Program-made: the position numbers and the translations under genes
NCBI GenBank assembly: GCA_963924565.1
Contig: OZ004607.1
Location: forward strand, 30,194,001 to 30,258,000
Length of the DNA stretch: 64,000 nt
Source: Ascidiella aspersa
Taxonomy: Eukaryota
Direction of reading: 5' to 3'
Notes under the pieces: model-generated
Databases searched by the model: none
Seen by the model: the letters and a program-made list of their open reading frames with translations, nothing else
Told to the model about the DNA's origin: nothing
Shown here: positions 1 to 46,728 of the stretch, one piece after another
How the letters are laid out: each line of letters starts with the position of its first letter
How positions within the stretch are numbered: position 1 is the first letter of the stretch

Positions 1-387
1 GGGGAAAAATGTTTAATAAGTTATTGAAATCGGGATTGTTATGTTCTAACTATGCATCACACGCACATTTCAATATGGATTTTTAATATTTTCTTGTAGA
101 GCGGCAACTAAAAACAGCTCTAAAAAAATTGTTTTACAGAATTTTTTTTAATAACCATAATCTATATTTTGTTTATACCAAACCCAAAAACACAAAAATA
201 GAAAGACATGGGAATATTTCAATTGGCAAAAACGTTGAATAAAGAATAATTTAGTTTTATCACTCGGAAAAAGTACTCTCTCGACTAAATCTATGGTATG
301 GTTGAAAAATGAAGCCATGAAAGCTAAACCTCTGTCTCCAGGTGGCTACATATTACACAACATACATTAACCAAAAAAAAATATTAC

Positions 388-4505: not shown

Positions 4506-4539
4506 TGTTTGTTAGTTGTGTAATAGAGCTAGCTCTGAT

Positions 4540-18370: not shown

Positions 18371-21300
18371 CTATTTCTCCGGCTGCTGATCGTCGGGCGT
18401 TTCTGGAATGATCGATTTGTTTCTCGTGCTTTTCCGCCGCAAGCCCCACATGCTTCCCAGGGTGGGTGAAAGCGGGGGCGAAGAGTCGGCGGACAGGCTG
18501 CCCCGGTTAGCCTGCTGCGGGACCTGCTTCGAAAAAAAAAGCGGCGATGACCAATTATAAGATCTATACGCGCAGATTGCGATTAAGAGAAAAACTTAGT
18601 TGTTGTCACCTGGTGCATCTATAATGTCGGTTAGGTGTACTTAGTACCAGAGTTGCGGAATCGGTTAAAAATAACCCGAGTCGCGCGTCCGAGTTCGGCC
18701 AAGTGTGCCATTTCGTTTAGTACCGCGTCCGGTTCAGACTCTACAGCAGGGGTTCTTAAACTGGGGTCCATGGACCCCTTGGGGGTCCGTGAGCTAGTTT
18801 TAGGGGGTCCATGAGGTCGTAATTAAAATGTTAGTATATTTCTATAAAGTAATAATTTATTCAAAAAAGACAGTTTAATTGAAAATAAACCGGTTTTTTT
18901 TAACTGTATTTAGACTCCATTTCACTTTCACACTTTTTAAACTGAAATCAGCAGATTTATAACGTCTATTTGCATTGTGACGTTAATTTATGACGTCATT
19001 TTGGAAAATATTTTACCTACCGTGGTCCACGTGAGACAAAAAAATGTTTAGGGGTCCGCGGTAAGAAAGTTTAAGCAATCCACTTTTTTTCAACAATCCA
19101 CTTTTAAGGGTTGTCATATAATTATTATTCATCCACTAACAATTCATGGTTCGAAAATATTGACCATATGTTATTTCCGGCTTCCGCCACAATTTACAGT
19201 TAGCGGCCATATCAGTTTAAAAAACTTGGTACTGCGCATGCGCACGTCGGAATCAGGTAGTTTTCCGTGGCACATTAATATTAATGCGAATTAACCACTT
19301 CGAAAGTCGCAGTGGCCCAGGATGGCGGAGCGTGTTTAGAACAACTCGACTAATCAGAAGTGTAGTAAATTATTTCATTTTTTAAAGTTATACAATATCT
19401 CCCATATTGTATTACTCAGTAGTAGCTTTCATCCAGAAGTAAGTTCCCAACGTCAAAAACGGAAACGAAAAAATAAATTACAAATGAGGTGATTTGGTTT
19501 TATATACAATGAATATAAATAAAATGTGATTGATTTTGTTTGTTATGTACACAATCGTCATAGTGGAGTAGAATTGAACGACTATAGACGTCATAAACGC
19601 TAGTGCTAAAGGAGTAGGTTGCTTGGTTCTTGGAATGAACAGAAAACTATGCCAATTCGGTTCGAAGCAATAGTGAAGGTTGAGAGGCAAAAATAACGAT
19701 CAAGGGCCGCCCCAAGAAATACTCAGTTGAAATCAGCGAACCTGAACTGAAGTCTCTGGCTTCCGCTTTTGCCGTTCCTCCTCGTCGGCTGACGTCATGG
19801 CGATGTCGGGCGTCGAAAGATCGAGAACCTGCCTGGCGTTCTGCAGGTCGCCCACGATGCGCTTTATTCTCATCGGAGCCAGCACCTTCCGTCGAAGAAC
19901 GTTCATGAAACCGACTCTCTGCTCGCGAAGGTTGGCCGAACCGGGACGCTTGGCGCCGTCGGCGTCTTCCTGCGGCGTACCGGGCCGGCTGTCGCTCTTG
20001 TCGGCCGCGGCGTCGTCGGTTCCGTCGCTGGATTCCTTGTCCTCGTCGTGCATCGAGCGACGGTTAATGACGCCTGACCTGCGACAATTTGTATCATGTG
20101 TATAGATTGGGAAAGTCGAAAACGGAGATGCGAGCATTTTTCGCACAATGCCTTCGAAAATGTGCGCACATTTTGAGATAGTTAATACGGACACAACTCC
20201 TAACTCTAGCTTTAAGTTAAACTTGAAGGCAGTTTCAAATGTGCGCACATGTTTTGCACATTTTTGCGCACATTGTGCAAAACAACACCGCACCCCCTGT
20301 TGGAAAGACGGCCTTTTTACGAGGACAAACATTTTTTTTTTAATTTTGTGACCCTATTCAGTGAAAGCGCATTTTTACGATTGTTGCGAGTCCAGTGTTT
20401 TTTTAAGGTGTTTTGGGGGAACGAAACGGTCCCCCAAATTTCTCCAGCGGTTTCCCAATTTTTGGACTTTTTGGTATTTATATGAAACACTTGCGGTCTC
20501 TTAAAACTACTTAGCGGTCGCCCAAACCAAACCTTAAAAAAAACTGGTTGTGACCGTGTACTATGTGTTTTAACAACTGTGGTAACAATAGACAACTTTT
20601 GTTTAGATATTGACCTGCAGCCTTTTTATATACAAGGATAGGTAGTATGTATTGTGAAACATCCAAACCTCAAAAATTTCTACAGTTCAAAACCGCAGGT
20701 TTAACCAATTCCATATACCAGTGTTGAAATGACTGAATGAATTCTACACAGCATATATCACTGTTTTTAAATGGCTTGAATAAACTACAGTATTTTGGGA
20801 AATATTATCTGAATTCACATAAATCTTTCGGATAAAAAGCCTGACTTGGACTTAATTAAATTGGGCCAACGAATCGACTTGGATTTCAGTATTTTCAATA
20901 ATAATTTTCGGTAAAATTTGATAGGTTTTTACCGATTTCGTGTTTGTGAAATAGTTTAATCGGTAAATTTTGATGCAAATCACCTGGATCGGGACGTAAA
21001 TAGTTGTTTTCGTCACTGACGTCACATGAGTTATTACAAAAATGACTTGACTGGGACTTAGGTTCTTTGCAGACTGACTTGTTTACAGCACTGATGTACT
21101 TAGTAGTGTAACATAAAAAAACGTAGCTAAAAATGGGAGTCTTGGGCTCTCCGAATTAGCCTTTTGACCCGACATTGAGTTATTTAAAGCTGTCTAAAAA
21201 ACGAGGATCTACTTGGAGGGGATACGTAGCCCGGTAGCTCATCAGGTCAACTGCAATCAGTGCAATGCAAAACGTTTCCAAAGGTCAACCGCTTCAATCA

Positions 21301-29020: not shown

Positions 29021-29716
29021 ATGTCAAACGAAATCCACGTTTCTGAACTGAGAAAGAAGTACAAGGAAAGCCATGAATATTTCGATGAAAGCGTTGCCAG
29101 CGGCATAAGTCCAATCACTCTTTTCGAAAACTGGTTCAATCAAGCCAGAAATGAACCCGCCATAAAAGAACCCAATGCCATGTGTTTGGCAACGGTGAAC
29201 AGCGAAGGGAGACCAACGGCAAGAATGGTCCTGCTTAAAGATTTCGGCCACGACGGCTTCAAGTTTTTCACAAACTACAGAAGTGCAAAAGCCAAGGATT
29301 TGGATGGAACCCCTTTTGCTGCCTTGGTGCTCTACTGGACCGAACTCTGTAGATCTGTACGTATTGAAGGGACTGTTGAAAAGCTGTCGACTGCTGAAAG
29401 TGCAATTTATTTCAGCAAACGACCAAAGGAGAATCAAATTGCCGCTCATGTTAGTAACTATCAGAGTGAGCCAATTGAAGGTCGACAGGTTCTGGAAAAG
29501 CGTGCGAAAGCTTTGGATGAAGAATACAAGGAAAAGGAAGTGCCTTGCCCTGAGTATTGGGGAGGCTATGTGGTCAAACCAGACAAATTTGAGTTCTATC
29601 AAGGCCAATCGTCAAGAATGAGTGATCGCATTGTGTTTGCAAAAACGCATGATGAATCACAGAAACTCTGGAAATCTGGTGATGATGGATGGAGCTATCA
29701 AAGATTGCAGCCTTAG
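29021..29716 (+). CDS. Pyridoxine/pyridoxamine 5'-phosphate oxidase-like paralog 1 (intronless)
   Basis: Contains SELRKKY, EPNAMCLAT, PTARMVLLK, FFTNY.S.K, VRIEG, WGGY, EFYQGQSSRMSDR and GWSYQRLQP. Confidence 0.93.
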   Translation: MSNEIHVSELRKKYKESHEYFDESVASGISPITLFENWFNQARNEPAIKEPNAMCLATVNSEGRPTARMVLLKDFGHDGFKFFTNYRSAKAKDLDGTPFAALVLYWTELCRSVRIEGTVEKLSTAESAIYFSKRPKENQIAAHVSNYQSEPIEGRQVLEKRAKALDEEYKEKEVPCPEYWGGYVVKPDKFEFYQGQSSRMSDRIVFAKTHDESQKLWKSGDDGWSYQRLQP

Positions 29717-29947
29717 AAAATGATTGTTCAAAATTGCCAGCATTATTGCTCCAAGCCACGTAAACAATAAAAAAGCAACATTTGTTTATAGTTTTCTATA
29801 TGCAGACATTGTTCAAATTTTCCTTTGTGCTTGTTAAGTTATACTGTACCTAGATGCAATTGTTACAGCAATAAATAAATAGATATAATATAAGTATAGT
29901 AAATTAGTGTTAAAATTTATTTAATATTCTTTAGGCAATTTGTTAAA

Positions 29948-30634
29948 ATGTCTATGTCAGAATTGAGGCAAGATTATAACGATGAAACTAACCCTCTTAC
30001 TGAAGATGGCTTCACCTTCAAAAATCCAATAAAGATTTTTGAAGAGTGGTTTAGAATTGCCAAAAACACCAGTGGAATTTTTGAACCAAATGCAATGACA
30101 ATAGCCACTGTCACCAAGGAGGGTTTACCTACTGCTCGCATAGTCCTACTGAAAGATTTTTCTGAAAAAGGTTTTACGTTCTTTACACATTACGGAAGTC
30201 CTAAAGCACAGGATTTGGAAACCACGCCATGTGCTGCATTGGTTTTCTACTGGCCAAGTTTGTTTTGGTCCGTTCGCATAGAAGGAAAAGTTGAGAAGCT
30301 ATCGTCCATAGAGAATGACAGATACTTTGACAGCAGACCACGTTTACACCAGATTTCAACCAGAATTACGGAGCATCAAGGAGCCTTGGAATCCAGAGCT
30401 GAGTTAGACAGACGTGTACTTGAATGTAAAAAACTTTATGTCGACAAAAAAATACCAAGGCCCGACTTCTGGGGTGGATATATTGTCATTCCAAAGACAG
30501 TTGAATTTTGGCAGGGTCAGAGTTCAAGGTTGAGTGACAGATTTCTGTTTAAGCGTAGTGTTGATGTTGCAAAAGATAGTGTTGACTGGAAGAATGGTGA
30601 TGATGGTTGGATGTATCAAAGATTGGAGCCATAA
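29948..30634 (+). CDS. PNPO-like paralog 2 (intronless)
   Basis: Contains SELRQDY, EPNAMTIAT, ARIVLLK, YFDSRP, WGGY, EFWQGQSSRLSDR and GWMYQRLEP. Confidence 0.93.
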   Translation: MSMSELRQDYNDETNPLTEDGFTFKNPIKIFEEWFRIAKNTSGIFEPNAMTIATVTKEGLPTARIVLLKDFSEKGFTFFTHYGSPKAQDLETTPCAALVFYWPSLFWSVRIEGKVEKLSSIENDRYFDSRPRLHQISTRITEHQGALESRAELDRRVLECKKLYVDKKIPRPDFWGGYIVIPKTVEFWQGQSSRLSDRFLFKRSVDVAKDSVDWKNGDDGWMYQRLEP

Positions 30635-30774
30635 AATCATTGTTTTATGTAATATTGATTTTCAATGCTAATGATTTTTCCATACCTTGCAACCGTTAAT
30701 TTAACCACAGTTCGTTTTTAGAGTATTTGATATAATACCTGAATATTCGTTAGATATTATTGTGGGTGCAATAA

Positions 30775-32310
30775 CACTGGTCTACAAAAAAAAAAAAAAA
30801 ATTCGTCCGGTTTTGATTTTGTCAACTGATTCTAACTAATTTGGGACGGTGAATCCGAATATGAACGCAGATTTGCTCTATCACATCAGGGTTTTTTCAG
30901 TAATGAAAACTTAATTTTACAACTCAACATTATGGTTTGACTACTTTAATAGGTTTCTATATGTGTTAAAGCTCTCTTTATGCTTGTCATTTTCGTTTTG
31001 AAAAAAAGGGCGCAGCTACCATTTAAAATACCCACGGTACCTCCCGACCTATTGCTCATAGTGACCAAGTTTCATTTTCTGTTTTAATTCATCTTTCACA
31101 AATTGACGAAAGGAATTTCACAACATCCTAATCAGATTTATCACAAGACGAACACAAAAAATTTTAAATGAAAATCTTGCCTTAGAGATTACCAGAAAAA
31201 CGTCTTCTGTATCCAGATACCAGTGTAACATTTTACAGGAAGAGAGAAGAAATGCTTTTGAAATAGTTTATTTCATACAATGTTTTCACATGTTGCAATG
31301 ATACAATTCTGAGGAATGGAGGCTATCAACTTAAAACGCAGTTTTATGTGAATGTTACTCACAATGGCAACTGATTAGGCTCCATTCCTATTGGGCACTC
31401 AGTTACTTTAAAATAAAAAAATGAAAATCATCAAGCTTGCTTTGAACAAATTAAAATATGAGCAATATGGTTGACCAAACTGTGTCTACTTAAAAATGGT
31501 GACATTTTTACTTAGGCAACAATCTAGATACACCAAGCTTTTCTGCATTGTTATTATTGGGATCCAAACAGCAACAATGGACTTAAAATGTGCATTCCTC
31601 AAGAGATAGTTTAACCCATATCATCCATGAACTACTGATAACAGCAGAAAAGATCTTTTTTTCGCCTTCGCATATCAAGCTTGTATTCATGAAGCAATAT
31701 GTTAAAGCTCTCAACTTTCATGAAGAATGCTTCCAATATATCGGCTTAAAGTTTCTTGAGCCAACTCAGGGAAAACTAAAAGCTTGAATATTTAATGCAC
31801 CTTAAATTCGACAACTAAAAGACTTAAATGTAGTGTCATCTATGTCTTCGAAGGCAGCTAGAGCTATGGGTTCAAAAGAGCTCTACCAAGGACGATAGAA
31901 CTGTCACATGGCACAGTATTGCTGGAGTTTAAAAGAGATACTTAAAAAGCATCATACAACAGAAAAAAATCATTGAAAAGAAAATTGTTCGTCATTGTAT
32001 TTTGGTAACTGATTTAGTGTTTCCGTATTTTATTTAAGTGATATGTTTACATTATTTACATACATAAATTATATTTCTGAATAGACCTATTTGCTAATGA
32101 ACTTATAGATATGTTATCATATATAGATAATTCTCTAGTAGGATCTAGAATGTGTTTACATTTTTAACCAAAAAGTTCAATTTTTCTTTTTAGAGCATGT
32201 GACTTTTGACGTGTTAGACAAAAAAATAATTACAAAATTGAAATAAGCGACCTCAAGTTACTCTAAATCAGTTTTCAAAGTCAACGCCGGAAATTTTGTG
32301 TTGACCAGTG
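30775..32310 (+). mobile_element. Decayed Chapaev3-like (CMC superfamily) DNA transposon
   Basis: TIRs cactggtctacaaaa / ttttgtgttgaccagtg, flanked by taa / caa (TWA-type 3-bp TSD with one mismatch). Interrupted transposase remnants CVYLKMVTFLLRQQSRYTK (~31481-31540) and SHIKLVFMKQYVKAL..CFQYI..KF..KLKA*IF (31660-31800). Confidence 0.75.
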
Positions 32311-32383
32311 CAATTTAACAGAAACACTGCATATGTAGCAAATAGCTCTACAGGTTATAAGAAGAATTCTACCTCACATTACA

Positions 32384-34196
32384 ATGAACTTTATTCGTAT
32401 GTTTCAAAGTCCTGTACCAATTGCCAAGATTCAATATTGGTGCGGAGTCAAGTGGTTAGTTCCAGATGCAAACAACCCGATTTATCCACAAGATAAAACC
32501 AATAGTCTATCAAAAGAAGCAAAGAAACAGCGGTACATCATTACTAATAAGAGCCTTCTCTGGTTTGCACGTGCAGGCTCTGAACTTGCAGGCGAGCCGT
32601 TTTACTATATATTCTTTCCTGCATGCTCTTGGATATTTGAAATCCATTTGTCAAGGAAATGTCTAATAATGCTTGCTGCTGTTATGTATGTAGGACAAGG
32701 TCTAAAAGTAAGTATTGAATTTATGCAAAGTCAAAGAACAAAGTCAATATTCGCTAAATGTTATGTTTTCTAGGATATTTTAAGGTGGCCACGACCCACC
32801 TCACCACCTGTTATTCGACTTGATGAAGCCTATGAAACAGAATATGGCATGCCTTCCACTCATACCATGTGTGCGGTTACTGTTCCTCTTACTTTACTGC
32901 TGTTTTTGTCACAAACTTATGAGGTAAAAATCTGTGTCACTTAACTTATTCGTTTCTTGGTCTAAAATGCACTAAAAAACGTTTTTAATTTCAGATTCCC
33001 ATGCTGAATGGCATCGTCCTCGCAGTGTTATGGATAGCCCCTGTTATTTTCAGCAGAATCTATCTGGGCATGCATTCAGTACTGGTAAGGTAAATCATGT
33101 TAAAAATTGTATTTTGCCATCGTTATGGCTGATATGTTTTTTGCAGGATATCCTTGTTGGAACTCTACTATCTGGGGTTCTTGTTAAACTTTTCGACCCA
33201 ATCGTAACTTGGATTGAAGAAGCTCAATTTAGCAACGCCAACCATTGGTCTGCCTCACTTAGCATCACTGCATTTTTCCTTGCTTGGATTATTTTCAAAC
33301 TGGACTCAACCGTGGACCCAGCAACGGGAAAGCCAAAATGGAACACAGCTCGGGGTGACACAGCTGAAATACTGGGGTGGTGTGCTGGTGAGTTTTTAAA
33401 CAACATTTACTGATTTTTCTGATGCATATTAACATTGCTACACATGATTTAAACCAGGGGTATAATATAACCTGGGGTTACACAATTTTCAACAAGATAG
33501 CAGTATTAGTTCACTTGTCATTAAACTTAAAACTAGTTTAAATCCTGGGTCTGGGGTCCATGTGACTATGTGCATTTACATCAATTGTTTCAACATAATA
33601 GTTATTTTTTAATGCAACGAAAGTGCCATTAGTAATATTACCGATAGTATATGGGATGTAAAACTTTTGGTCAAATGTCATGAAAGCTTGAAGTATACAA
33701 CACAAAAAAGGTTTTAAGATTCACTGATTTACAGAAAGCCTGAACAGTTTTTCTTTACATATATACTGCAGAATCTTCAATATTGAAAAAACAACTTTAT
33801 CACAGTTAATAATGTTGCTGTTCTGCCTTATTCATAGAAAAACTTCAAACTAAAATTACAATTGCAGGTTTTCTTGCTGGATCAAGCAGTGAATTTGCTG
33901 ATTGTCTGATGTCAGCAGCAGCAGGAAGTCACTTTATTACAAGTGCCAATTCCAATCCATCACTACGCTATCTGTTGCGTTTTGCAGCCGGTGGAGTTCT
34001 GCTGGGACCAGCCACTCTACTACTGCGCAAACTCTTAAGAAGATGTTGCATGTCCCTGAAAGGCGTGACCAATGTAGAGAAAGCTAAGAGAGAACGTTGG
34101 ATAGAGCTACCATACAAGTTTTTGGCGACATATGCATCAGGCCTAATAAGTACAGCTCTGGTTCCACCTTTACTGCAGAGATTTAATTTGTGGTAA
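32384..34196 (+). CDS. SGPP: Sphingosine-1-phosphate phosphatase (SGPP1/2-like, PAP2 family), 5 exons
   Basis: Exons ~32384-32707, 32774-32923, 32995-33084, 33147-33387, 33868-34196. All three PAP2 motifs are intact: KDILRWPRP, EYGMPSTH and SRIYLGMHSVLD. NTARGDTAEILG and ELPYKF are typical of SGPP. Confidence 0.9.
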
Positions 34197-34855
34197 CTGA
34201 ACTTAACTATCTGATGCAAAGCTATTTATTGTTTGTTTTTTTCTGAAGGCAAATGTATTTTCATAGATTTATGAATTTATTATATAGTGTTTTTGTTTTT
34301 TTATTTTGTGCAAATATCAAAATTGAATTATAAGTAGCAGTCCCAATGTTATAACCAGGACTTGTGGAGTACGATTCGTGTAAAAAGATCACCAGAATCC
34401 CACATGCGTATGCGTAGTACCCGATTTCCAACCGTTAAATCCGCCTACTTTAATTGTAAACTATCTTTAAACACATGCTGAGGTGGATGATTGTATGACA
34501 CCCCTAGGAGTGGATGGTTGAATGTCCAACTTATTTTAGTTATGTAAAAGGATGAAATGCAGGGTGTAGAGTCAGACTCGGTTATTTTAAACGTCACTGC
34601 ATTGGTGGTTAAAACCATCTTATCAATCTATTTGATAAAGAATTTTTATTTTTAGTGTTAATCAAGATGTTTATTATTTAGTTTCGAAAGATAGCATTGA
34701 TATTTTCGTACTCACATATAAGATTTTAAAACTTTATAATGGTACTGTGTTTAAATTTTATGCAAATTGTGCTTGTATTTTATGTTTTTTGCATATTTAT
34801 GAAAGTTAATGTTGCTATCTGTTTGTTGTCGTAGAACAATTTGTTTTTTTTGGTA

Positions 34856-35614
34856 ATGTTTACAGTAAGACACATAAATAGATTTCTGGTGAAAAAATCT
34901 GCAACTCCTTTTTTAACAATGTCATCACAAAGCAGTTCCAGTGTTGCCAACAACTATGTAGAAGCCCCAATATCACTCAATGAATCCACATTACCAACTA
35001 AAAACCCCATTACATTGTTTGAAAGCTGGTTTCAACAAGCCAATCGCAACCCTCACACTAAAGAACCTCTTTCCATGGCCTTGGCTACAGTTGACGAAAG
35101 AGGGCGTCCTACGGTGAGAATGGTTTCTGTAAAAGGATTTGGTCATGATGGTTTTAAGTTTTACACAAACTATTGCAGTAACAAAGCTAAAGATATGGCT
35201 GCAACACCTTATGCAGCCCTTGTAGTTTATTGGGTGGAGCTCTGCTGCTCGGTTAGGATAGAAGGCAAGGTTGAACGACTCACACAACAAGAAAACAAGG
35301 TCTACTTTGATCAGCGACCGAAGCCTATGCAGGTGGTCGCGGTGGCGAGTGAAAAGCAGAGTTCGTTCGTCAAAGATGCAGATGAGCTGGAGGCAATGCG
35401 GAAGAGAGTGGAGACACACTATAAGGGTGATAATAACATACCTTGTCCAGAATACTGGGGTGGGTACAGACTGATGCCTGACAAGGTGGAGTTCTGGCAG
35501 GGTCAGAGCTCACGCATGAGCAACCGGATTGTGTTTGTTAGGGAACAGGAAAACAGGGACAAAGAGTGGACACAGGGCGAAGATGGCTGGATATATCAGC
35601 GATTGCAACCCTGA
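34856..35614 (+). CDS. PNPO-like paralog 3 (intronless); alternative start at 34919
   Basis: Contains EPLSMALAT, PTVRMVSVK, FYTNYCSNK, YFDQRP, WGGY, EFWQGQSSRMSNR and GWIYQRLQP, plus a basic N-terminal extension MFTVRHINRFLVKKS. Confidence 0.92.
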   Translation: MFTVRHINRFLVKKSATPFLTMSSQSSSSVANNYVEAPISLNESTLPTKNPITLFESWFQQANRNPHTKEPLSMALATVDERGRPTVRMVSVKGFGHDGFKFYTNYCSNKAKDMAATPYAALVVYWVELCCSVRIEGKVERLTQQENKVYFDQRPKPMQVVAVASEKQSSFVKDADELEAMRKRVETHYKGDNNIPCPEYWGGYRLMPDKVEFWQGQSSRMSNRIVFVREQENRDKEWTQGEDGWIYQRLQP

Positions 35615-35867
35615 CTTGTTGACATTTCTTGAAATGTTTAGGCTGTATTCAATTTCTTAATTATAAAATTTATTTAGTAATTATGCACATATGACCAAGG
35701 TGATCCGTTGATTCTCACACTGTAGTCTATCTTTCTTCCCTTACTTTTAAGTGAAAATGCACATTTTGATGAAATTTTTCATTAGGACTTCTTCATACCT
35801 AAATAATTAGTTTGTTTCAATCTATAAAAAATTCATAAAATATGCAATCTTATTTACAGATTACCCC

Positions 35868-36599
35868 ATGTTGAGGTATTATAAACATTTAGTAAAAAGT
35901 TATATTGAATTACGAGGGTTTCATGTTTGTATTGTGAAAATGAATACCACTCAATCTGACCAATACCTCTCTGAAGACCAGTTAGAGAGCATGAATCCAT
36001 TCATACTCTTTGACAACTGGTATACCACTGCATGCAACAACAAAAATATCCCAATGCCTAATGCTATGAGCCTGTCTACAGTTAACCAGCAAGGTCATCC
36101 AACTGCACGAATGGTAATTTTAGGTGGTTATGGAGAATCTGGGTTCAAGTTTTACACCAATTATAACAGTGACAAAGCTAAGGACCTGGAAAAGACACCT
36201 TCCGCTGCCCTGATTTTATATTGGGCCGATTTGTTCCGTTCTGTGCGAATAGAAGGAGGGGTTGAGAAGCTTACTGCCGCCGAAAATTCAGAATATTTTA
36301 GCAAGATGTCGAAACCAGCTCAAATTGTGGCTGTGACAAGTGAAAATCAAAGTAGCTATGTGGAAAATGTTGAGGCACTAAACAAGATGGCTAAAGAAAC
36401 AGAACAAAGGTACAACAGTGAAGAGATTCCTTGTCCAAAATATTGGGGTGGATACAAAGTCATAGCAACCAAATTTGAATTTTGGACTGGTTCTGCAGAT
36501 ATAATGAGTGAACGTATTGTGTTTACTAAAGATGGTTTCAAAGACAAAGAAAAATGGAAACAAGCCAAGGATGGATGGTTTTACCAACACTTAATTTAA
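35868..36599 (+). CDS. PNPO-like paralog 4 (intronless, most divergent); alternative start at 35940
   Basis: Contains PNAMSLST, PTARMVILG, FYTNYNSDK, RSVRIEG, WGGY, EFWTGSADIMSER and GWFYQHLI. Confidence 0.9.
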   Translation: MLRYYKHLVKSYIELRGFHVCIVKMNTTQSDQYLSEDQLESMNPFILFDNWYTTACNNKNIPMPNAMSLSTVNQQGHPTARMVILGGYGESGFKFYTNYNSDKAKDLEKTPSAALILYWADLFRSVRIEGGVEKLTAAENSEYFSKMSKPAQIVAVTSENQSSYVENVEALNKMAKETEQRYNSEEIPCPKYWGGYKVIATKFEFWTGSADIMSERIVFTKDGFKDKEKWKQAKDGWFYQHLI

Positions 36600-37750: not shown

Positions 37751-40700
37751 TCAGGTCTGAGTGAGCTGTTCCAGTAAAGCCTCGGTTGTTGCCGTTTCCC
37801 CTTCACCAGTTGCAGCAGTCGTGGTAAGGACCTTAGTAAAAACAAAAACAGCATTTTAGAATTGCTATCTTGCCTTTTATGAGCATGCTTAAGCACACGA
37901 AAGTTACAAAAAAGGCAAAAACCTTATATATATATATTTCACCTGTGAGGTAGAATCTGTGCCGTCTTCTGTGCTTGTCATGTAAACATTGCCATCTTCT
38001 CCCTAGCAAAGCAAAAAATCAGATTGAATATTGGATTTTTGCTAGACATAAATGAACAAAAAGCATTCAAAATTTTACAACCAGGTGCTGACCAAAATTG
38101 TTTTACCTCGTTAAATGCAAAAACAACACTGACAGTACCAAACCTTGAGTATTTAATCTACCTGAACAAATGTTGCTCCGGGCTGTCCGATGATGTACCC
38201 GTCATCGGTTTGTATCAGTGTGTAACCCTCGGGCAACTCAACGTACTGCCCGTCGCCAATGGCAACCAGCTGCTTGCCTTCCTCGGCCTCCAAAACTGTG
38301 GTTCCATCGTCGGCGACCACTTGGGCAGCTGCCTCGCCGCCGTCAACCGCTTGTTGGGTGGCCAACATTTCTTGATTGAGGTCGAGAACTGACGTGGTGG
38401 CAGCAGCGTCTGCACCCTGTGAAACTGTGGAGAGACAGGTTGTTCATGAAAAGGTTATGTTTATGCGACTTGTATAATATTTTCCGGCAGTTAGGTAATT
38501 TTTTTCAAGAAATAATCGACTAAATCCCTAATAAGCAGTTATTTAGCGTCTGCACCCTGTGAAACTGTGGAGAAGCAGGTTGTTACTGAAATGGGTATGC
38601 TTTGCCTGCGCGACTTGGGCGATGTTTTTCGACAGTTTTGTTAAAAGTAATCTATAGGTAATACACCGAATGCCGCCCGATCAGCACAAAGTGTAAATAA
38701 AGACCTTATAGGCAATGATTTCTTTTAAATAGAAACCTTTTCTAAAAAACTTCACTAGTCCTTGACTAGAAAACGAGAGGGATAAGTAAAGCGGCTCCAG
38801 GTCGTTTGCTAAAGCCAGACGGCAAGGTAAGGGGCCTAACAGCCCAGATAAATCAACTATTAGGGAGAAAATTCATGTTGCACGGCTATTAGATCATGAT
38901 CAACAACAGGCTTTATACACTTACCGGCCATAATGTGTTCCGTTGTTGTGGTGGGGGTTGAAGAGTCGGCGATCGGAGCAGCCGCTTGGTTCGTATCCTT
39001 GGCCATCTGCGACTGGTACCTGCCCACCAACTGCATCCGGGCGTGTTCCTGAAGGGTGCTGTGGGAAATTCCCTTGTTGGAACCCAGAAGGTAGCTGGGT
39101 TTTCTAACCTGGTATGGCTTGTTCCAGTTGTTGGCTTGGGTTCTGCAAAGTGAACTTGTTAAAAGTTAAGAAAATTAAACTGTGACCTGAAGGTCTCCAC
39201 AAGGCGGAATAAGACAAGAGTAAGATATATTTCAAATAAACTTCACTCCAATTTGGGTCTTAGATGTGATTTTAGGCTTTAATATTACCACATTTTGGGC
39301 AACTGTTTTGATTTAATAGACCACGAAAATACAAAACAGTTTATTTTGTGTTTAACCATACAAAAAAGACTGTATCCAAGAAACTAAGGAACTTTATGCT
39401 TGCACATTAATCAGAGAATTTTCATTTACTGCAAAACTTTTCACATCATACAATTTGATTGAAATGACAATCGGACGGAGCATATTGATTGGTTAATAAC
39501 ATACCCCTGCAGTCGAGACCCAGTGTAGGATTTATGGTTGAAGCTTGGTTGGTCAGGTGTGGTACTGTCAGGTTCTGGATGCCTTGTATATCGAGTAGAA
39601 GTTGGCCCCCTTCTCTTGTTTCTCATTTGACCTAGTGATTGAAAACAGCAATATTAGGCATTATTAAATGCAACAAAAATAACACCAAAAACCAGGGCTG
39701 CGGAGTCAGACTTTGGACTCAACTAGATAGATATATATAACACCCCCAAATACCCCATGAGTGATTGCTGAATATTCACCTTATTTTAGTTATGTTAATG
39801 GGTTATGTAAAGGCTGTAAATCGGAGTCGAACTCGGTTTCCCAGCCTAAAATACTTAACAAATGTCAAGAAACACAAGCATCTCCTGCAGAAACATTCAA
39901 TTATTATGATATATTTTTAGACAAGCAATTCAGCAGTTAATAAAAAAGTAGTCCTGTTTCAAAATCTTCAGATAACTTATATAAACTTACAAGCCGAAGT
40001 TTTACAATCAGAAAGAAACACAACTTTATAAATGTAGACAGTTGACAAAACTACCTTTGTCAGCAAGATCAGGAAGGCGGAGTCTGTGTCGAGGTTGTTC
40101 CATTTTGCAGTTCATCCTGAAGGAATTGGCGGCGATCATTTGCGCGGTGCTCTTTTGCTGGATGCCGCCTATGTGGGCATCAATACTGCTGCTGTTGATA
40201 TCTATGCTCTCGGCAGCCTGAGGAAAAAAATGGTTTTGTATTGATAACACTAAAACCGAAGAAATTGATGCCAAAAAATATTTTTAGCATTTTTTTAAAT
40301 CCATTTCACAAAAAAAACATGTGCTTGTTTTCACGCTTGTCATATATTAAAGCACGAATATGTAGTAACGTTTGCACTACAATTGGCGGGAGTTCATTTT
40401 GTTGCATGCCATTTTAAAAATTTACAAAGTGCTTGTGACTTCTCAAAAACAATGTAATATCAGTGCCCACTATATCCTTGTCAGGTCAAATTTCCCAATT
40501 AAAAAGTTGACACACATAGAAAGGGGGGCCCAACCTTTTTATTGTAGACCGGCATGAGGATGACTTTGTCCATTCTGCGTTCACCCCCAACTTTGTTGGC
40601 CCTCCTCAGCAAGGTGTTATAGCGAACTGATTCCTTTTCAATGGCGCTGTGAAGGAACTCCAGTTGTTTGTACAAGGAAGCAAATTTTACCTTCTCTGTT

Positions 40701-43700
40701 GACATCTGATCAGCCTGATTAAAAAGTTTAAAATTATGATCAAATCCAACATTGAATAACTGTGAAACTGTGAAAAATTCACGCTCCACTTTGATTAAAC
40801 CACAATCTAGGTAAGCTCAGTCGGCTTACCATTAAGTAAAAATAACAGATTAAGCATCTTGTTATTTTACTACCTTTTTAACAGCAGTCACTCTCCATTT
40901 ATTTTTAAAAGGTTATAAAGTTCTATCAATCACATTCAGTAGAATAGAAGAGTTGGAGAAAAACAACTTGCAATGTTTTTAATCTAAATTAATTCATTAA
41001 AACAACTGAACAGCAAAACAATTTGCTATTGAGGTTGTCAGAATTGTGACACCAATTTGGTGCAGGGCAGATATGTCTAAAAAGTGAATGATTTTTAGAT
41101 TTTACCTTTAACCTAGTTATTTATTATAATACAAAGTGACACAAAAGTTTAATTAGATTCTTTTCACCAACCTTGTGAAGAAAGAAATCACCAATTGATA
41201 TAGACTCAAGGGCCTTGGGAATAGCAACACTTCTTATTTCTTCAATGGTGCACTGCTGCAGCAACTTTCTTAAGCGATATTTGTTGTCAACGTCACCTTC
41301 TTCTTCCACCTATTCAAAAACCATTAGTGCATTGTACATTTTGCAATCAATAAAAATAGTAAATGGTATATAAACAAAAAGTGTTTATGTCATTTTTAAA
41401 TTTCCACCGCCATAAACACAGTTAAAAGTAAACTAATCAATTTGCTAAATCAAATACAATTAATGGCAATAGATTTCTATTTTCTATGTATGGAAAAATA
41501 AAAAAAAATATAGGTTTTAGTTTCAAAATACACTTTTCAAATAACAGCGCCTTCAATTAAGTTTACCTTATTCAGCGAGTTTGAAAACCAACTACCATTA
41601 AACAAAGCAAAATAAATCACAACTCACAAAATCAGTCAGGGTAGGTTTGGGCTCTGCTTCCTTCTTTTCAGTAGCTTCGCCATCCTGAATGTTTGATGCC
41701 AAGTCTAGCTTTCTTGCAAGAATATCTGAAGGCGTTTCTCCATCCGATGAAATTTTACGAACCTCTTCAGGTTTTTTAAACTCTGCCTGCTCCTGAGATT
41801 TGACTTCCGTATCTTCTGGCTTTTTTAAATCAACGTCTTTGTCTTCTGACTTTTCATCATTTGTTGCATCCACATCTGGTTTTGCATCCTCTTTTTTCTC
41901 ACTGGCAGTGTCATCAGTTTCCATTTTTTCCGCACTGTCATCTTTCGGTTCTTTGGTCGGCTCATTCAAAGCCTCATCTGTTTGTGGTTTTGAGGTATCT
42001 TCAGTAGTCTTTGATTCGGTAGCGTCAATTTCCATTTTCTCACCTTCTTTCTCTTCGGGCTTTTTCTCTGCTTGTTCTGGATCAGTTTTATCTGCTTCAG
42101 TGGTTTCTGCATCTCCACCTGAAACTGTTTCACCGACGTCAGTGACTTTGCTCTCAGAAGATTGTTCATCCTTTGGCTTATCCGTGACCTCAGGGACTTG
42201 TTCAGTCTTTTCAGCGGAATCTTCTTTTTTCTCATCGTCAGTTTGGAGTCTTATAGTATCAGCGAGTTTCTTATCACCGGGCGATACAAGGACCATTGGG
42301 CCTTTGCTGGGCGGAGGACTTGATACTGGAGTGTCCAAAGACTTTGCTTTTGAATCGCTGCTGTCCACAGATGAAGCATAATCTTCATCACCAGGCTTAG
42401 GCTTTCGAGGTCTACCTCTCTTTCGCTTTTTTCCAGGCATCAACTGCCCGGCACTCATTGGAGTGATCGGTTTAATAATTGGCATAGGTTTTGGTGGGGT
42501 AACTGCATGGGAGGTATCGTAGTCTTCATCAGGAGAAGCATCATCACCGACATTGCGCCTCTTCGTCAAACGAGCAATATCCAAACTATACCTGTAATAT
42601 CACATGGAAAAAAAAGTGTATAAAAAAATATATATATTGAAGTCCTAATTACCAGAACACAATATAATATTTTATATAATTTATAGCCAGCACATTTTTT
42701 GACTAAAACTCAAATTTTTATTTTAAGATGTTACTTACAAACCTTTTTAGCTTTTTGCGGGATAAAAATTTGAAGTACGATAAAAAAATTTGAATACAAA
42801 TTACTGGTTCTCAACCTTTTATGGCTTACGGCACCCCTCAAAAATAATAAATTGATTGTTGGCACCCCACTGGAATTTAGTATTTTACAAAAATGTTACT
42901 ATAGATGGAACTGGAACAATACAATCAACTTAAAAAATGTAGGAAAACGTCATTTGATATATTGGTCTCTAATCGTACACAAATAGTTGTATAAAATCAA
43001 GGAGCTTACCAATTAAGCCAAAATCAAATTCTTAAAAATTCTCAAATACCTATGAGCATTAAAAATGACACACCAAGGGCACCCTGCCACCCCAGTTGAG
43101 AACCACTGCCACAACTTAATAAACAGGCAGTACACAGGAAACAAACCTTGAAGGCTTCCTTATTCTTCCGGATCTTGACTTTCTCTCTTGCATTGCAGCG
43201 GCAAGAAGTTCAGCTTCCTCTCGTTCCCTCCTTTCCTCCTGGAGGCGCTGTTGTTCTGCTGCCAGCCTCTCCTCCTCATCTGTATCTTCCTCAATTTCCC
43301 CGTGGAAGATCCTCTTCATGTACTCCAACGAAGCCCTGTCTTCCGACTCTGATTCGTCGACCGAAACCAAGGGTTCAACAACTTCCGGTTTAATTTCCTC
43401 CTAAAAATATATTAGGTTGAATTTGGAATGACAAATGTCCTTCTTCGAATATGAACAAAGGGCCTTAATTTTGTTTTCAATTCAAAAAAATAAAGGGAAA
43501 AATCAGTGAAAGTAGGTTGAATTATTTTTAGCTTATTAAAAAGTTTGGGAAGCCCTGCTATCAAGTACTATGAATCATCGAAAAAAATTATTTCTACAAT
43601 CAATCTAAAAACCCACATATTTAACAAAATATTAACAAACTTTTCAGCTTTAATACCTCGTTCACATTTTGATTGTCTTCAACCTCCTTTTCTTCCCATT

Positions 43701-46549
43701 CCTTAACCAACTCCTCCAGGCTGTGGTCTTGTGGCGTCTCATACTTAGAGGTGAGCAACAGATTGTAGTCAGGGTGTAGCTCCATGTTACTCAAAATGTC
43801 ATGGCTGACTTGTTTGGTGTGGATTTTTACCTTTTCATAAATGGAAGGTTTAACATCGTCCGTTTTTAAACATATATGTTTTTGTCTGATATTTTTCCAG
43901 TTTTAAAATGTAAGTAAAAGTAACTTTTAAAAAAGCACATTTTTTTAGCAAACTACATACATAAGATTGTACCAACAAATTAAAAAAAATGTTTGCTGAA
44001 GAAAACAGGTAAGAATATGATTTGCCTTGTCATACAACATACAGTAAATTCTTCTTCACAAGTCCAGTAAGTAATATCTAATCACCGTGAAGGTTGCATT
44101 CGGTTTGTTGAGCTTGGCAATAGCATCAGTAAGCATAATTTGAGCAGGTAGAGCAGGTGGCTTCATTCTTCCTAAAAGGCCACTAGAAATAGCCAGGGCA
44201 TCTGGAATAAGCTTTGGACGACCAGGGCCACGCTTCTTCATGCCAACGTTTGGCGAATATCTGGCATACCTTTATTAAAAAAGTTGTTTAGGTATAGAAG
44301 TGTATATTAATGCCTATAATCAGTATATCAGCGAAAAATCAAGAAATATGTGAAAAACAAAATTGTATGTCAATTTATTTTTGTTTTACACACATATGTT
44401 GTTTTAACACATATTGAACCTCGTAATTTTCGAAATCATTGATAGATAGGAAGACTCAGCACTAAAATTTGCAGAAATTGATATTGATTCTATTGTTCCA
44501 TTCAAAAAAGTTACACAACTGTTAAGCATATTGTTTAGTTTGGAAAAAGGCAGTGCTAGGCATAAAGATTGTTTAATGTTTTAAAAAGTACTAAATTTTA
44601 ATCATAGAATTAATACGTTTTGCAACAGGGCGGTTGAATCATTTTTTTAACCATTGAACTTTAAAGACAAGACAAAAAAACGAAGAATTTTGCCCAAAAG
44701 TGCTGGCCACCAGAAGGCTCGCAAGATTTTGCCAGCCTGCCTATTATATAATATTACACCAACAAGAGTCAGACAAACAACAACTTTTTAAAGCACATCA
44801 ATTAGACTTACTTTGAAACGTTTCCCTTTGGTCTGCTTTCATCAGAATAACTCATCCCGAAATCTTCGTCAAAGTTATAGATGGACTCGTCAGCAGTTCC
44901 TTCTTCACTATTTTTCCTTTTTACACCTTGCTGCTTGGACAGGCAGCTGAACAGGTTCTTAGGTGGTTTAGAAAAGCTTTTGCCAGTGGGGATGTGCCGA
45001 AACACCACCTGAAGATACAGACACATATTATTCATGATGAAAATATTACTAGTCCTCTATTATTGCCAATATTATTTAACTCCTGAAAAACTTAAATGGA
45101 AAACTGTCAATGGTAATTGCAGAACCTAAACCAACATAAGTCGCTAACTGTAATGATTTCTGCAAGATTAATCAAAAAAAAGTAGAAAGTTTGTTTAATA
45201 TGATGTACATATCCTTAGCTAATTTATACCTTTATGTTTGGATTAGCCTGTAAGGCTTGTAGTTGATCTTGCGTGATTTGAGACTGGTGGATCTGAACCA
45301 TCTTTGTTCCATCGTTTGCAACCTTGAGGTTTTGGGCTGAGAATGTGAGTCCTGGTACTCCCAGACTGAATGTTCCGGACTGCCAAGCAAAACATAAATG
45401 TTTAAAGCTAATATGTTAAACCTAAATACAGTAAGTAATTATTTTATTTATAACAATAATTTGGTAAGAAAATACTGTATTGTATTTAATAGTGATCGGC
45501 CGATATCACTTTTTTGGGCCGATACCTGAACCGATTTTTTTATATATTGGAAACTGTTAAAACTTGAAATAATTGCAAATAAAATTCAAATAACGGTTTA
45601 GTTTATTATAAACCCTTATTAAATGTTAAACTATTATTTTGCATATTATATTGGCTTGATGTTAAAACCCAAATTTTTGGTAAGTTGTTTATTGTACTGG
45701 AAAAACTATATCATATTTTCGTACTAAAATATCGGCCTACATTTACCGATACCGATATATCTGTAGAAGCTAAATATCGGCCAATATTATCGGTAAACAG
45801 ATATATCGGTCTTTCTCTAGTTAGTCTAGTATTTAATAACTTAAATTGAAACTAGAATATTTTAATTCAAAAAAATTAATAAAATACATATAGAAAGCAA
45901 GGCTTGAAAACGGAATTAGTTTGGTAGCTTTTGGGATTAAGTAGAATATGTTAGAAACACAGGTTTCAATTAAAGTAAAGTATATTAACTTTACCTTAGG
46001 TTTATTGGGTTTTGCCACCTTTTCCTGGCCAGCTATCACAGTTTGGGATTCTGTACCAGTAGTCAGTTGTTCAAGTGGAGCTTCTGTTTGAGGAGGCACA
46101 GCCTCAGCATTGATAGGTGCCATGCTTTCCAAAATCGAAGTGTCAGCCTCCATGGTCGATACGTCAGTAATCATCGAGTTGGGATCAACCTCCAAGCCAG
46201 GGTTTTGCTGGACCTGCAGAGAAGAGGAATCTGGCTCTGTCAGGGAAGGCTCAGTATCAATAGAAGAAGGTTCAGGCACTGCAACAGGCTCAGACTCTGC
46301 CACAAGCTGCTCTATCGATGTCTCCTGAGCTTCGTTGCTGTCTTTGGTCTCCTGTTGATCCTCAACAATGGGAACAGCATCAACTTCCATGACACCCTCC
46401 GGCTGATCCGGAATCAGCTTGCTCACAATGGCCGCTAGGTCATCCTGCTGGACTTCTGCCTCTTGGGCTTGGATGATGTTTTCAATAGACACAGTTGAAT
46501 CAGGGGCACTGGCTTCCTCTGGCTGTTCAACAGTCTCTGGGTTTTCCAT
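37751..46549 (-). CDS. Uncharacterised acidic, AT-hook-containing (probably chromatin-associated) protein, paralog A, ~15 exons
   Basis: Exons approx. 45994-46549, 45230-45380, 44810-45008, 44086-44270 (KKRGPGRPK), 43638-43829, 43147-43400, 41628-42591 (KRKRGRPRKPK), 41172-41309 (RLRKLLQQCTIEEIRSVAIP), 40548-40713, 40055-40218, 39503-39630, 38924-39142, 38161-38425, 37942-38003, 37751-37831 (..EQLTQT*). Some boundaries are approximate. Confidence 0.75.
45490..45819. mobile_element. MITE with tagtgatcggccgata-type ends
   Basis: Inverted ends tagtgatcggccgatatc / gatatatcggtctttctcta with repeated ccgata/tatcgg motifs. Confidence 0.6.
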
Positions 46550-46728
46550 GTTTGCCAAAAGCCTAAACTAACCTAATGTAATGACCTATAATGAAAAATG
46601 TTCTGTTTAGACTACTCTTTTGTCACATCCAAAATCACCTCAGTTTTGCATCAAAATTTGAAAACAGAAATAATGGAATTTAATCTAATTCCATGAGACT
46701 TTAGTCAACTTACTGTATGCCAGGTGTT

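What the first reader, a model, noticed from the sequence alone, without database searches (positions are those of the whole stretch)
29021..36599. Four intronless PNPO-like flavoenzymes, none with a canonical vitamin B6 active site
Seen: four intact ORFs with the PNPO fold motifs and shared substitutions. In human numbering, the RLHDR motif reads RMSDR, RLSDR, RMSNR and IMSER (H227 to Ser in all four). RQVR becomes xSVR in all. SRK becomes SAK/SPK/SNK/SDK. The S165 position is N/H/M/A. Known: in PNPO/PdxH, K100, Y157, R161, S165 and R225 bind the substrate phosphate, H227 contacts the pyridine 3-OH, and R116 and Q139 contact FMN. Animals normally carry a single intron-containing PNPO, and related split-barrel FMN oxidases such as PhzG serve natural-product pathways. 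Inference: a retrocopy-derived family has kept its frames open while remodelling the substrate pocket, and may be a neofunctionalised oxidase family acting on something other than PNP/PMP.
Basis: partly seen in the sequence, partly recalled or inferred. Interest (0 to 1): 0.82.

Follow-up and report, generated by a model that had tools for sequence, protein, structure and literature searches.

The report
Sea-squirt PNPO gene family, partly remodelled
A sea-squirt genome carries four neighbouring single-exon copies of the vitamin-B6 salvage enzyme PNPO: three look like this lineage's ordinary enzyme, while the fourth keeps its flavin site but has lost the residues that hold the vitamin's phosphate.

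Summary
Four intact, single-exon PNPO/PdxH-type genes lie on the + strand (A 29021-29716, B 29948-30634, C 34919-35614, D 35940-36599).

- The window is from an ascidian. Single-exon PNPO genes in tandem beside a PAP2 gene are normal there (Ciona, an unnamed tunicate contig), and Styela's PNPO is single-exon too.
- Two of the four "shared substitutions" (R116x, Q139S) are ordinary family variation.
- His227Ser is rare overall (8 of 242 relatives) but typical of the main PNPO of Ciona and Phallusia.
- The genome has no His-type PNPO.
- A, B and C keep K100, Y157, R161 and R225. They are most likely working PNP/PMP oxidases, or close variants.
- D keeps 8/8 FMN contacts but only 1/6 substrate contacts. 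It resembles an engineered E. coli variant that cannot bind substrate.
- Similar phosphate-clamp-less paralogues occur in Ciona (two, dN/dS 0.14), in Phallusia and on another chromosome here (copy E).
- B, C and D are transcribed. C is under purifying selection.
- The genome also carries de novo PLP synthase genes (PdxS/PdxT), so PNPO may serve salvage only.

Verdict: a lineage-specific expansion of a known enzyme family, with one clearly remodelled member. Moderate interest.

The parts
29021..29716 (+). Copy A, 231 aa. Ser-type PNPO with substrate contacts K100 Y157 R161 N165 R225 S227. It groups with Phallusia paralogue a (P0002), though that fork is weakly supported, and is the likely working PNP/PMP oxidase.
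   Evidence: ORF. Pfam and NCBIfam hits (pdxH 233 bits, against 240-257 for canonical animal PNPOs). E 9e-64 to human PNPO 1NRG. Shortest branch of the four (0.43-0.49). RNA was not examined for this copy.
29948..30634 (+). Copy B, 228 aa. Ser-type PNPO-like (K Y R H165 R S) with extra changes (R138W, S175G). It is the earliest-branching and fastest-evolving of A-D.
   Evidence: 210 bits. Alignment A1. Branch length 1.13-1.23. Sense-strand RNA depth about 2 over 30300-30699.
32369..34193 (+). PAP2-family phosphatase gene with introns. It is the syntenic marker of the tunicate PNPO locus and lies between the A-B pair and the C-D pair.
   Evidence: Exon-by-exon tblastn matches to the Ciona PAP2 gene and to the same gene on tunicate contig L017. 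Spliced RNA with GT..AG joints at 32921/32993 and 33083/33146. The exons were not joined into a model.
34919..35614 (+). Copy C, 231 aa. Ser-type PNPO-like (K Y R M165 R S; D228N). Sister of D and co-orthologue of Phallusia paralogue b.
   Evidence: 201 bits. Trees (C+D 95/82 and 98/86). Highest RNA depth in the stretch examined (up to 14). The RNA individual shows 9 synonymous and 4 non-synonymous differences, pN/pS about 0.12.
35940..36599 (+). Copy D, 219 aa. Phosphate-clamp-less PNPO-like protein: G100, Y157, M161, A165, I225, S227. It keeps all eight FMN contacts. R258 is His and the C-terminal Pro is missing.
   Evidence: 191.5 bits. Column tables (8/8 FMN against 1/6 substrate contacts, Fisher p 0.003). 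AlphaFold model pLDDT 92.6, TM 0.90-0.94 to human PNPO 8QYT. Sense RNA depth about 2.3 starting after 35900. Branch length 0.93, similar to C at 0.86.

Best explanation
This is an ascidian-specific tandem expansion of the PNPO/PdxH family of FMN-dependent split-barrel oxidases. It sits at a conserved locus beside a PAP2 gene. The ancestral ascidian gene was already single-exon, and copies arose by local DNA duplication. In the lineage that includes Ciona, Phallusia and this species, the main enzyme replaced His227 with Ser.

Copy A, and probably B and C, keeps every FMN contact examined bar one and the cationic phosphate clamp (K100, Y157, R161, R225). These copies therefore most likely still oxidise PNP/PMP to PLP for vitamin-B6 salvage, perhaps with altered affinity.

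Copy D is a later duplicate of C. It lost K100, R161, S165 and R225 while keeping the fold and all eight FMN contacts. It probably still binds FMN as a dimer but cannot hold a 5'-phosphorylated vitamer in the canonical way. It has either moved to a non-phosphorylated substrate or serves a non-catalytic flavin-binding role.

Shown here: gene structure, family membership, residue states, synteny, transcription of B, C and D, purifying selection on C, and absence of a His-type gene. Inferred: enzymatic activity of A-C, FMN binding by D, and any new function of D.
For: - Ascidian origin: the best hits are Phallusia (61%, 57% identity) and Ciona (56%).
- Synteny: Aldedh ... PNPO tandem - PAP2 - large minus-strand gene is shared with Ciona, and PNPO-PNPO-PAP2 is shared with tunicate contig L017.
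- Single-exon genes in Ciona (three tandem ORFs), Styela and L017.
- Tree: Ciona1 + [B + (A, (Phallusia_a, P0001), (Phallusia_b, (C, D)))], with C+D at 95/82 and 98/86.
- Residues: K100, Y157, R161 and R225 are near-invariant in 242 relatives and are kept in A-C. R116 and Q139 are freely variable. H227 is Ser in Ciona1, in Phallusia a and b, and in the rotifers Rotaria and Adineta.
- No other PNPO exists in the genome.
- D keeps 8/8 FMN contacts against 1/6 substrate contacts, p 0.003. Its fold is intact.
- The engineered E. coli variant K72I/Y129F/R133L/H199A cannot bind PNP at the active site, and R197E raises Km 8000-fold (PMC8215295). D naturally changes the equivalents of K72, R133, R197 and H199.
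- The same selective loss occurs in Ciona 1b and 2 (0/6 substrate, 8/8 FMN), which show dN/dS 0.14, and in Phallusia P0259 and ENA P0257/P0065.
- B, C and D give sense-strand RNA. C has pN/pS about 0.12.
- Synonymous sites are saturated between all pairs while every frame stays open.
Against: - No enzymology exists for any Ser227 PNPO, so the activity of A-C is inferred.
- S165 is also replaced in A-C (N, H, M).
- The genome carries PdxS and PdxT, so PNPO activity may be dispensable. The whole family could then have drifted to other roles.
- All four RNA-individual differences listed for D are non-synonymous. Under neutrality this has probability about 0.4, so relaxed constraint on D cannot be excluded.
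- RNA was read at low depth (about 6% of one run). A and E were not examined.
- I could not search the whole Ciona or Phallusia genomes for a His-type PNPO.
Confidence: 0.65

Rival explanations
1. One reading: the whole family (A-D and E) has left vitamin-B6 salvage and acts on other substrates. The animal would cover its PLP needs through de novo PdxS/PdxT synthesis plus pyridoxal kinase.
For: None of the five copies has His227 or Ser165, and no other PNPO is in the genome. PdxS and PdxT genes lie head-to-head on contig C7, so PLP can in principle be made without PNPO. From my own knowledge, Bacillus subtilis uses PdxS/PdxT and has no PdxH homologue.
Against: A-C and their Ciona and Phallusia orthologues have kept K100, Y157, R161 and R225 across divergences where synonymous sites are saturated. 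This is hard to explain unless a 5'-phosphorylated, PLP-like ligand is still bound. A scores 233 bits on the pdxH model, within 7-25 bits of canonical animal enzymes. Ser at 227 recurs independently in rotifer PNPOs. S165 is Ala in 27 of 242 relatives.
Confidence: 0.15
2. D, and perhaps E, is a decaying duplicate on its way to becoming a pseudogene. It is still transcribed and has an open frame, but has no selected function. Its loss of substrate residues is simple degeneration.
For: D has lost 5 of 6 substrate contacts, the allosteric-site Arg258 and its C-terminal Pro. The four differences seen between the RNA individual and the assembly are all non-synonymous. RNA depth is low, about 2.3.
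Against: The loss is selective: 8/8 FMN contacts are kept against 1/6 substrate contacts, p 0.003. D's branch (0.93) is about as long as that of its constrained sister C (0.86, pN/pS 0.12), not several times longer. Synonymous sites between C and D are saturated, yet the 219-codon frame is open. The model is confident, pLDDT 92.6. The analogous Ciona pair shares its losses and shows dN/dS 0.14.
Confidence: 0.2
3. The four genes are recent retrocopies of an intron-containing parental PNPO that has since been lost.
For: All copies are single-exon. An A-rich stretch (17 of 20) lies 149 bases downstream of B.
Against: Single-exon PNPO genes are found in Ciona, Styela and tunicate contig L017, so the intronless state predates these duplications. 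The copies are tandem and co-oriented at a locus syntenic with Ciona, which is the pattern of unequal crossing-over and not of retroposition. Synonymous sites are saturated, so none is recent. A-rich stretches are expected in a genome of 63% A+T.
Confidence: 0.05

Closest known systems
Human PNPO (PDB 1NRG, 8QYT) and E. coli PdxH (1G76): FMN-dependent pyridoxine/pyridoxamine 5'-phosphate oxidase
   Same: Both Pfam domains are present. E-values to the human enzyme are 1e-63 to 1e-64 for A. The D model superposes on the human enzyme at TM 0.90-0.94. FMN contacts R95, S115, K117, R141, Q174, S175 and R229 are kept in all four copies by alignment A1, except S175G in B. The phosphate clamp K100/Y157/R161/R225 is kept in A-C.
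   Different: His227 is Ser in all four, and Ser165 is N/H/M/A. D also lacks K100, R161 and R225. The genes are single-exon and present in five copies, not a single intron-containing gene.
Engineered E. coli PdxH quadruple variant K72I/Y129F/R133L/H199A (PDB 6YLZ, 6YMH; PMC8215295)
   Same: D naturally carries non-binding residues at the equivalents of K72 (G), R133 (M) and H199 (S), and also at R197 (I). The engineered protein folds, keeps FMN and cannot bind PNP or PLP at the active site. 6YLZ is among the structural matches of the D model.
   Different: D keeps Tyr157. The engineered variant still binds PLP at an Arg-cage allosteric site. In D, the residues at two of the four human allosteric positions are changed (F48 to L, R258 to H), so a PLP-carrier role is not indicated.
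Ciona intestinalis tandem PNPO-like genes (P0005 plus two downstream ORFs, locus L016) and Phallusia mammillata paralogues (P0002, P0004, P0259)
   Same: Same locus next to PAP2 in Ciona, same single-exon structure and same Ser227. Both species show the same split into one clamp-bearing copy and clamp-less copies that keep the FMN contacts.
   Different: Copy number and order differ: Ciona has three copies before PAP2, while this genome has two before and two after. By the tree, the clamp was lost separately in Ciona 1b/2, Phallusia c and window D.
PhzG, the phenazine-pathway FMN oxidase of the same fold
   Same: Same two-domain split-barrel fold. Its substrates carry no phosphate, which makes it a model for what a clamp-less PNPO relative can do (PDB 4HMT and 4HMX appear among the structural matches, TM about 0.75-0.80).
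   Different: Scores on the PhzG equivalog model are 115-156 bits against a cut-off of 270. Identity is 21-26%, and there are no phenazine genes nearby. These copies are not PhzG.
Yeast YLR456W/YPR172W, 'putative PNPOs' shown to lack activity (PMC4556617)
   Same: They are a precedent that annotation by homology overcalls PNP/PMP oxidase activity.
   Different: Those proteins have only PF01243 and do not bind FMN. D has both PF01243 and PF10590 and all the FMN contacts. It would pass that paper's proposed two-domain rule even though it lacks the substrate clamp.

Membership tests
PNPO/PdxH (EC 1.4.3.5; TIGR00558) | Two-domain architecture: PF01243 (PNPOx_N) plus PF10590 (PNP_phzG_C) | tested here: met
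   All four copies hit both domains above the gathering scores.
PNPO/PdxH (EC 1.4.3.5; TIGR00558) | Score above the curated equivalog cut-off (180 bits) | tested here: met
   A 233, B 210, C 200.6, D 191.5. E scores 119.7 and fails. Caveat: Ciona proteins with 0/6 substrate contacts also pass, at 192-203 bits, so this criterion does not establish activity.
PNPO/PdxH (EC 1.4.3.5; TIGR00558) | Split-barrel fold as in solved PNPO structures | tested here: met
   Tested on D only. pLDDT 92.6; TM 0.90/0.94 and rmsd 1.6 A to 8QYT.
PNPO/PdxH (EC 1.4.3.5; TIGR00558) | FMN-contact residues R95, S115, K117, R141, Q174, S175, W219, R229 | tested here: met
   A 7/8 (W219Y), C 8/8, D 8/8. B is 7/8 by alignment A1 (S175G) and 6/8 in the hmmalign table because of a one-residue shift.
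PNPO/PdxH (EC 1.4.3.5; TIGR00558) | Substrate phosphate clamp K100, Y157, R161, S165, R225 in copies A, B and C | tested here: inconclusive
   K100, Y157, R161 and R225 are kept. S165 is N, H or M. S165 is Ala in 27 of 242 relatives, so it is not strictly required.
PNPO/PdxH (EC 1.4.3.5; TIGR00558) | Substrate phosphate clamp K100, Y157, R161, S165, R225 in copy D | tested here: not met
   D reads G100, Y157, M161, A165, I225. The equivalent engineered losses abolish substrate binding in E. coli (PMC8215295).
PNPO/PdxH (EC 1.4.3.5; TIGR00558) | His227 (E. coli His199) contacting the substrate | tested here: not met
   Ser in A-D. His in 234 of 242 relatives and Ser in 8, among them the main Ciona and Phallusia proteins and rotifer proteins.
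PNPO/PdxH (EC 1.4.3.5; TIGR00558) | Oxidation of PNP/PMP to PLP | not testable with these tools
   Needs recombinant protein assays or complementation.
PhzG (NF038138) | Score above the equivalog cut-off of 270 bits | tested here: not met
   115-156 bits for A-D.
Processed retrogene | Intronless copy of an intron-bearing parent, poly(A) remnant, target-site duplications, dispersed location | tested here: inconclusive
   No intron-bearing parent exists in this genome. Single-exon PNPO genes are shared by three other tunicates. The copies are tandem, not dispersed. No convincing poly(A) remnant was seen. An ancient retroposition before the ascidian radiation cannot be excluded.

The most novel reading that the evidence does not exclude
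Ascidians have repeatedly produced, and kept under selection, PNPO paralogues that retain the FMN site but have lost every contact to pyridoxal phosphate: window D and E, Ciona 1b and 2, Phallusia P0259, and P0065/P0257. These would form an undescribed class of animal flavoproteins acting on non-phosphorylated substrates. Candidates include free B6 vitamers or aromatic amine or alcohol metabolites. This would sit in a chordate lineage whose vitamin-B6 metabolism is rewired, with de novo PdxS/PdxT synthesis present and the salvage oxidase carrying Ser instead of His.
Probability: 0.3. Interest if true: 0.6.

Novelty: new variant of a known kind. Interest (0 to 1): 0.4.

Why it matters
- **Annotation.** Homology-based annotation would label all five genes 'pyridoxamine 5'-phosphate oxidase'. 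Even the curated equivalog model and the two-domain rule accept proteins that have lost every substrate contact.
- **A natural experiment on His227.** The Ser-type enzymes of Ciona, Phallusia and this species are natural variants at His227/His199, a residue regarded as highly conserved and important for substrate orientation.
- **A testable family.** The clamp-less paralogues keep the FMN site under purifying selection in Ciona. They are a tractable case of repeated loss of a substrate site in a medically important enzyme family, and Ciona is a model organism in which they could be knocked out.
- **B6 metabolism in a chordate.** PdxS and PdxT in a chordate genome bear on when animals became dependent on dietary vitamin B6.

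Tried and rejected
- **dN/dS between the window copies.** Synonymous sites are saturated for every pair, so no ratio can be given. Only the Ciona 1b/2 pair gave a usable, near-saturated value of 0.14.
- **D as a PLP carrier using the allosteric site.** Not supported. Two of the four human allosteric positions are changed in D (F48 to L, R258 to H).
- **Operon-like co-transcription of C and D.** Read depth is zero in 35700-35899, so there is no support at this depth.
- **One ancient clamp-less subfamily.** The tree backbone is unresolved. D and Phallusia c fall inside the A-D clade, so at least some losses are independent. The placement of E with P0065/P0257 is weak (90/58) and sits on a very long branch.
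- **PhzG membership.** Rejected on score.
- **Literature.** Searches for PNPO in ascidians, for single His199 mutant kinetics and for PdxS/PdxT in tunicates found nothing usable. My recollection that single His199 mutants of E. coli PdxH mainly raise Km could not be verified here and is not used as evidence.
- **Earlier scan notes.** No notes exist near this place.
- **The 25-letter leader.** The letters on PAP2 transcripts at 32330 match nothing in the window or the genome at up to 2 mismatches, so they remain unexplained.
- **Not attempted or not possible.** Complex prediction was not run, because a homodimer pass for a member of an obligate-dimer family would not have changed my odds. RNA for A and E could not be examined, because read laying allows one call of 6,000 letters.
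- **Operators' rules.** The exons of the PAP2, PdxS and PdxT genes were matched one by one and were not joined into models.

Full report
**What is there.** One search shows four uninterrupted + strand ORFs: A 29021-29716 (231 aa), B 29948-30634 (228 aa), C 34919-35614 (231 aa) and D 35940-36599 (219 aa). Each has Pfam PNPOx_N plus PNP_phzG_C. Each exceeds the NCBIfam pdxH equivalog cut-off of 180 bits, with scores of 233, 210, 200.6 and 191.5. A matches human PNPO (PDB 1NRG) at E 9e-64 over its whole length, and that alignment fixes the human numbering.

**Whose genome, and is the arrangement unusual there?** The closest proteins are from the ascidians Phallusia mammillata (61% and 57% identity) and Ciona intestinalis (56%). 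In Ciona the PNPO gene is a single exon. It is followed by two more single-exon PNPO-like ORFs and then a PAP2 gene. The window shows the same neighbourhood, apart from an inverted Aldedh gene:
- an aldehyde-dehydrogenase gene upstream (window 385-3991, inverted);
- a PAP2 gene at 32369-34193;
- a large minus-strand gene at 37940-41309. All three match the Ciona flanks exon by exon.

An unnamed ENA contig (L017) has PNPO-PNPO-PAP2 in the same order, so it too is from a tunicate. The Styela clava PNPO is single-exon as well. Single-exon PNPO genes in tandem beside PAP2 are therefore the ascidian norm. This argues against a recent retrocopy origin and for local DNA duplication of an already intronless gene.

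**Is there another, canonical PNPO?** No. Three searches were run over the 308-Mb genome in six frames: the pdxH model, a His-type tunicate protein and a fish PNPO. They return only A-D plus one further single-exon copy, E, on contig C2 (249 aa, 120 bits, DLPDR). The same method found a five-exon PdxS gene exon by exon. An intron-split PNPO would therefore have been detected.

**Which substitutions mean something?** I aligned 242 relatives and read the columns.
- R116 is R in only 109, with E 56, A 27 and D 25.
- Q139 is Q in 149 and S in 92, including insects with the canonical His.

These two 'shared substitutions' are thus ordinary variation.
- K100, Y157, R161 and R225 are nearly invariant.
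- H227 is His in 234 and Ser in 8.
- S165 is Ser in 212 and Ala in 27.

A, B and C keep K100, Y157, R161 and R225 and differ only at S165 and H227. Among the relatives, Ser227 occurs in Ciona 1, Phallusia a and b, a close relative (P0001), P0065, the bdelloid rotifers Rotaria and Adineta, one moth paralogue and one unnamed protein. The syntenic tunicate contig L017 carries a His-type gene (P0011) at the same locus, so His-to-Ser happened within tunicates. On the pdxH model, canonical animal enzymes score 240-257 bits. The Ser-type main copies (Phallusia a, window A, Ciona 1) score 225-236.

Published structural work states that R225 and H227 orient the substrate ring, and that K100, Y157, R161, S165 and R225 hold the phosphate (PMC10969823). 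In E. coli, R197E raises Km 8000-fold and H199 contributes to substrate binding (PMC8215295). The catalytic Arg and the cationic clamp have been conserved in A-C over divergences at which synonymous sites are saturated. The most economical reading is that A-C still bind a 5'-phosphorylated vitamer, and that Ser227 is a tolerated lineage-specific variant.

**Copy D is different.** It reads G100, Y157, M161, A165, I225, S227, so one of six substrate contacts is kept, while all eight FMN contacts are kept (Fisher p 0.003). This closely resembles the engineered E. coli K72I/Y129F/R133L/H199A variant, which folds, keeps FMN and no longer binds substrate at the active site. D also has Leu at F48 and His at R258, two of the four residues of the human allosteric PLP site, so a PLP-carrier role is not indicated. 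Its AlphaFold model is confident (pLDDT 92.6) and superposes on human PNPO at TM 0.90-0.94 and rmsd 1.6 A.

**The same pattern elsewhere.** A profile search of 1.8 billion representatives, followed by column reading and name look-up, shows the same selective loss in these proteins:
- Ciona 1b and 2 (0/6 substrate contacts, 8/8 FMN contacts);
- Phallusia P0259 (0/6, 7/8);
- ENA P0257 (1/6, 8/8) and P0065 (2/6, 7/8);
- copy E of this genome (0/6, 7/8).

Ciona 1b and 2 share their losses (C157, L161, W225) and give dN 0.29, dS 2.06, ratio 0.14. The clamp-less state has therefore been maintained under purifying selection there.

In the tree, Phallusia a and b fall inside the A-D clade, while the placing of A beside Phallusia a is weakly supported. 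C and D are sisters (95/82, 98/86) and together group with Phallusia b. B branches earlier. Ciona 1 is sister to all of these, at modest support in the first tree (86/81) and unresolved in the second. Phallusia c falls with the b/C/D group, and Ciona 1b+2 form their own clade. The clamp was therefore lost more than once. The backbone is unresolved, and E sits on a very long branch.

**Expression and constraint.** One RNA-seq run of the same species was laid on 30300-36299, with about 6% of the run read. It gives sense-strand coverage of B (about 2), the PAP2 gene (3-5, with two GT..AG introns), C (up to 14) and D (about 2.3). Depth between the genes is zero apart from faint coverage just upstream of C, and no joints fall inside B, C or D. 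The RNA individual differs from the assembly.
- In C there are 9 synonymous and 4 non-synonymous differences, pN/pS about 0.12.
- In the covered half of D all 4 are non-synonymous. That is too few to interpret: the probability under neutrality is about 0.4.

D's branch length (0.93) is close to C's (0.86) and is not several times longer. This argues against long-standing neutrality.

**Context that affects the interpretation.** The genome carries an intron-split PdxS/SNZ gene (C7:8923717-8928878, minus strand) and, head-to-head with it, a PdxT/SNO gene (C7:8932483-8936973, plus strand). The exons were matched one by one and were not joined into a model. If these genes are functional, PLP can be made de novo and PNPO is needed only for salvage. 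This could explain why the family has been free to diversify. It also keeps alive the rival reading that none of the copies is a true PNPO.

**Verdict.** This is a lineage-specific expansion of a known enzyme family.
- The claim that all four copies have a remodelled pocket is overstated.
- The retrocopy origin is unsupported.
- The neofunctionalisation idea is plausible for D, for E and for their counterparts in other ascidians.

I found no literature on PNPO in ascidians. This agrees with the ascidian hits but adds nothing more.

Noticed in passing
G000:C7:8923717-8928878 (-) and G000:C7:8932483-8936973 (+); loci L019, L020, L022, L023: Head-to-head, intron-split PdxS/SNZ gene (five exon matches covering model positions 2-187 of 207, no stops) and PdxT/SNO gene. 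Together they are the two subunits of the de novo PLP synthase, in a chordate genome. I found no paper on this in the library.
   Followed up: partly
G000:C2:34731065-34731814 = L005:1327-2076 (+): Fifth PNPO-like gene E: single exon, 249 aa, with a Q/S-rich N-terminal extension. It keeps 0/6 substrate and 7/8 FMN contacts. GC is 0.54 and GC3 0.60, within flanks of 0.34 GC. The branch is very long, and expression was not examined.
   Followed up: partly
L016:11019-11645 (+), Ciona intestinalis AP043576.1: A third single-exon PNPO-like ORF (208 aa, clamp-less) lies between the two PNPO-like genes called in this Ciona record. It was not in the record's listed gene calls. A 208-aa protein with the same residues at all 15 key positions (P0254) exists in the protein collection.
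   Followed up: partly
window 32330: Three RNA reads at the 5' end of the PAP2 transcript carry 25 extra letters that match nothing in the window or the whole genome at up to 2 mismatches. Possible sources are an unassembled or polymorphic 5' exon or a trans-spliced leader.
   Followed up: partly
window 52413-53933 (+): A 506-aa ATG-initiated ORF with no Pfam family at E up to 0.01. Four other ORFs of about 200-330 aa (19733-20332, 41598-42584, 45833-46558, 48329-49120, all minus strand) also have no Pfam hit.
   Followed up: partly
window 385-5484 and 37940-41309: A conserved synteny block with Ciona. Aldehyde-dehydrogenase exons (75-91% identity, inverted relative to Ciona) and an ion-transport gene fragment lie upstream. 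A large minus-strand gene lies downstream of D.
   Followed up: no
P0253 (Ceutorhynchus assimilis, 438 aa): A beetle protein model with two PNPO domains in tandem, both with altered substrate residues (KNRRH and NVRHH). It was the top hit of the clamp-less profile. PNPO duplication with pocket changes is therefore not confined to tunicates.
   Followed up: no
window 32342-36274: The RNA-seq individual differs from the assembly at roughly 2% of transcribed positions (91 of 97 laid reads are 95-99% alike). This fits a highly polymorphic species.
   Followed up: no
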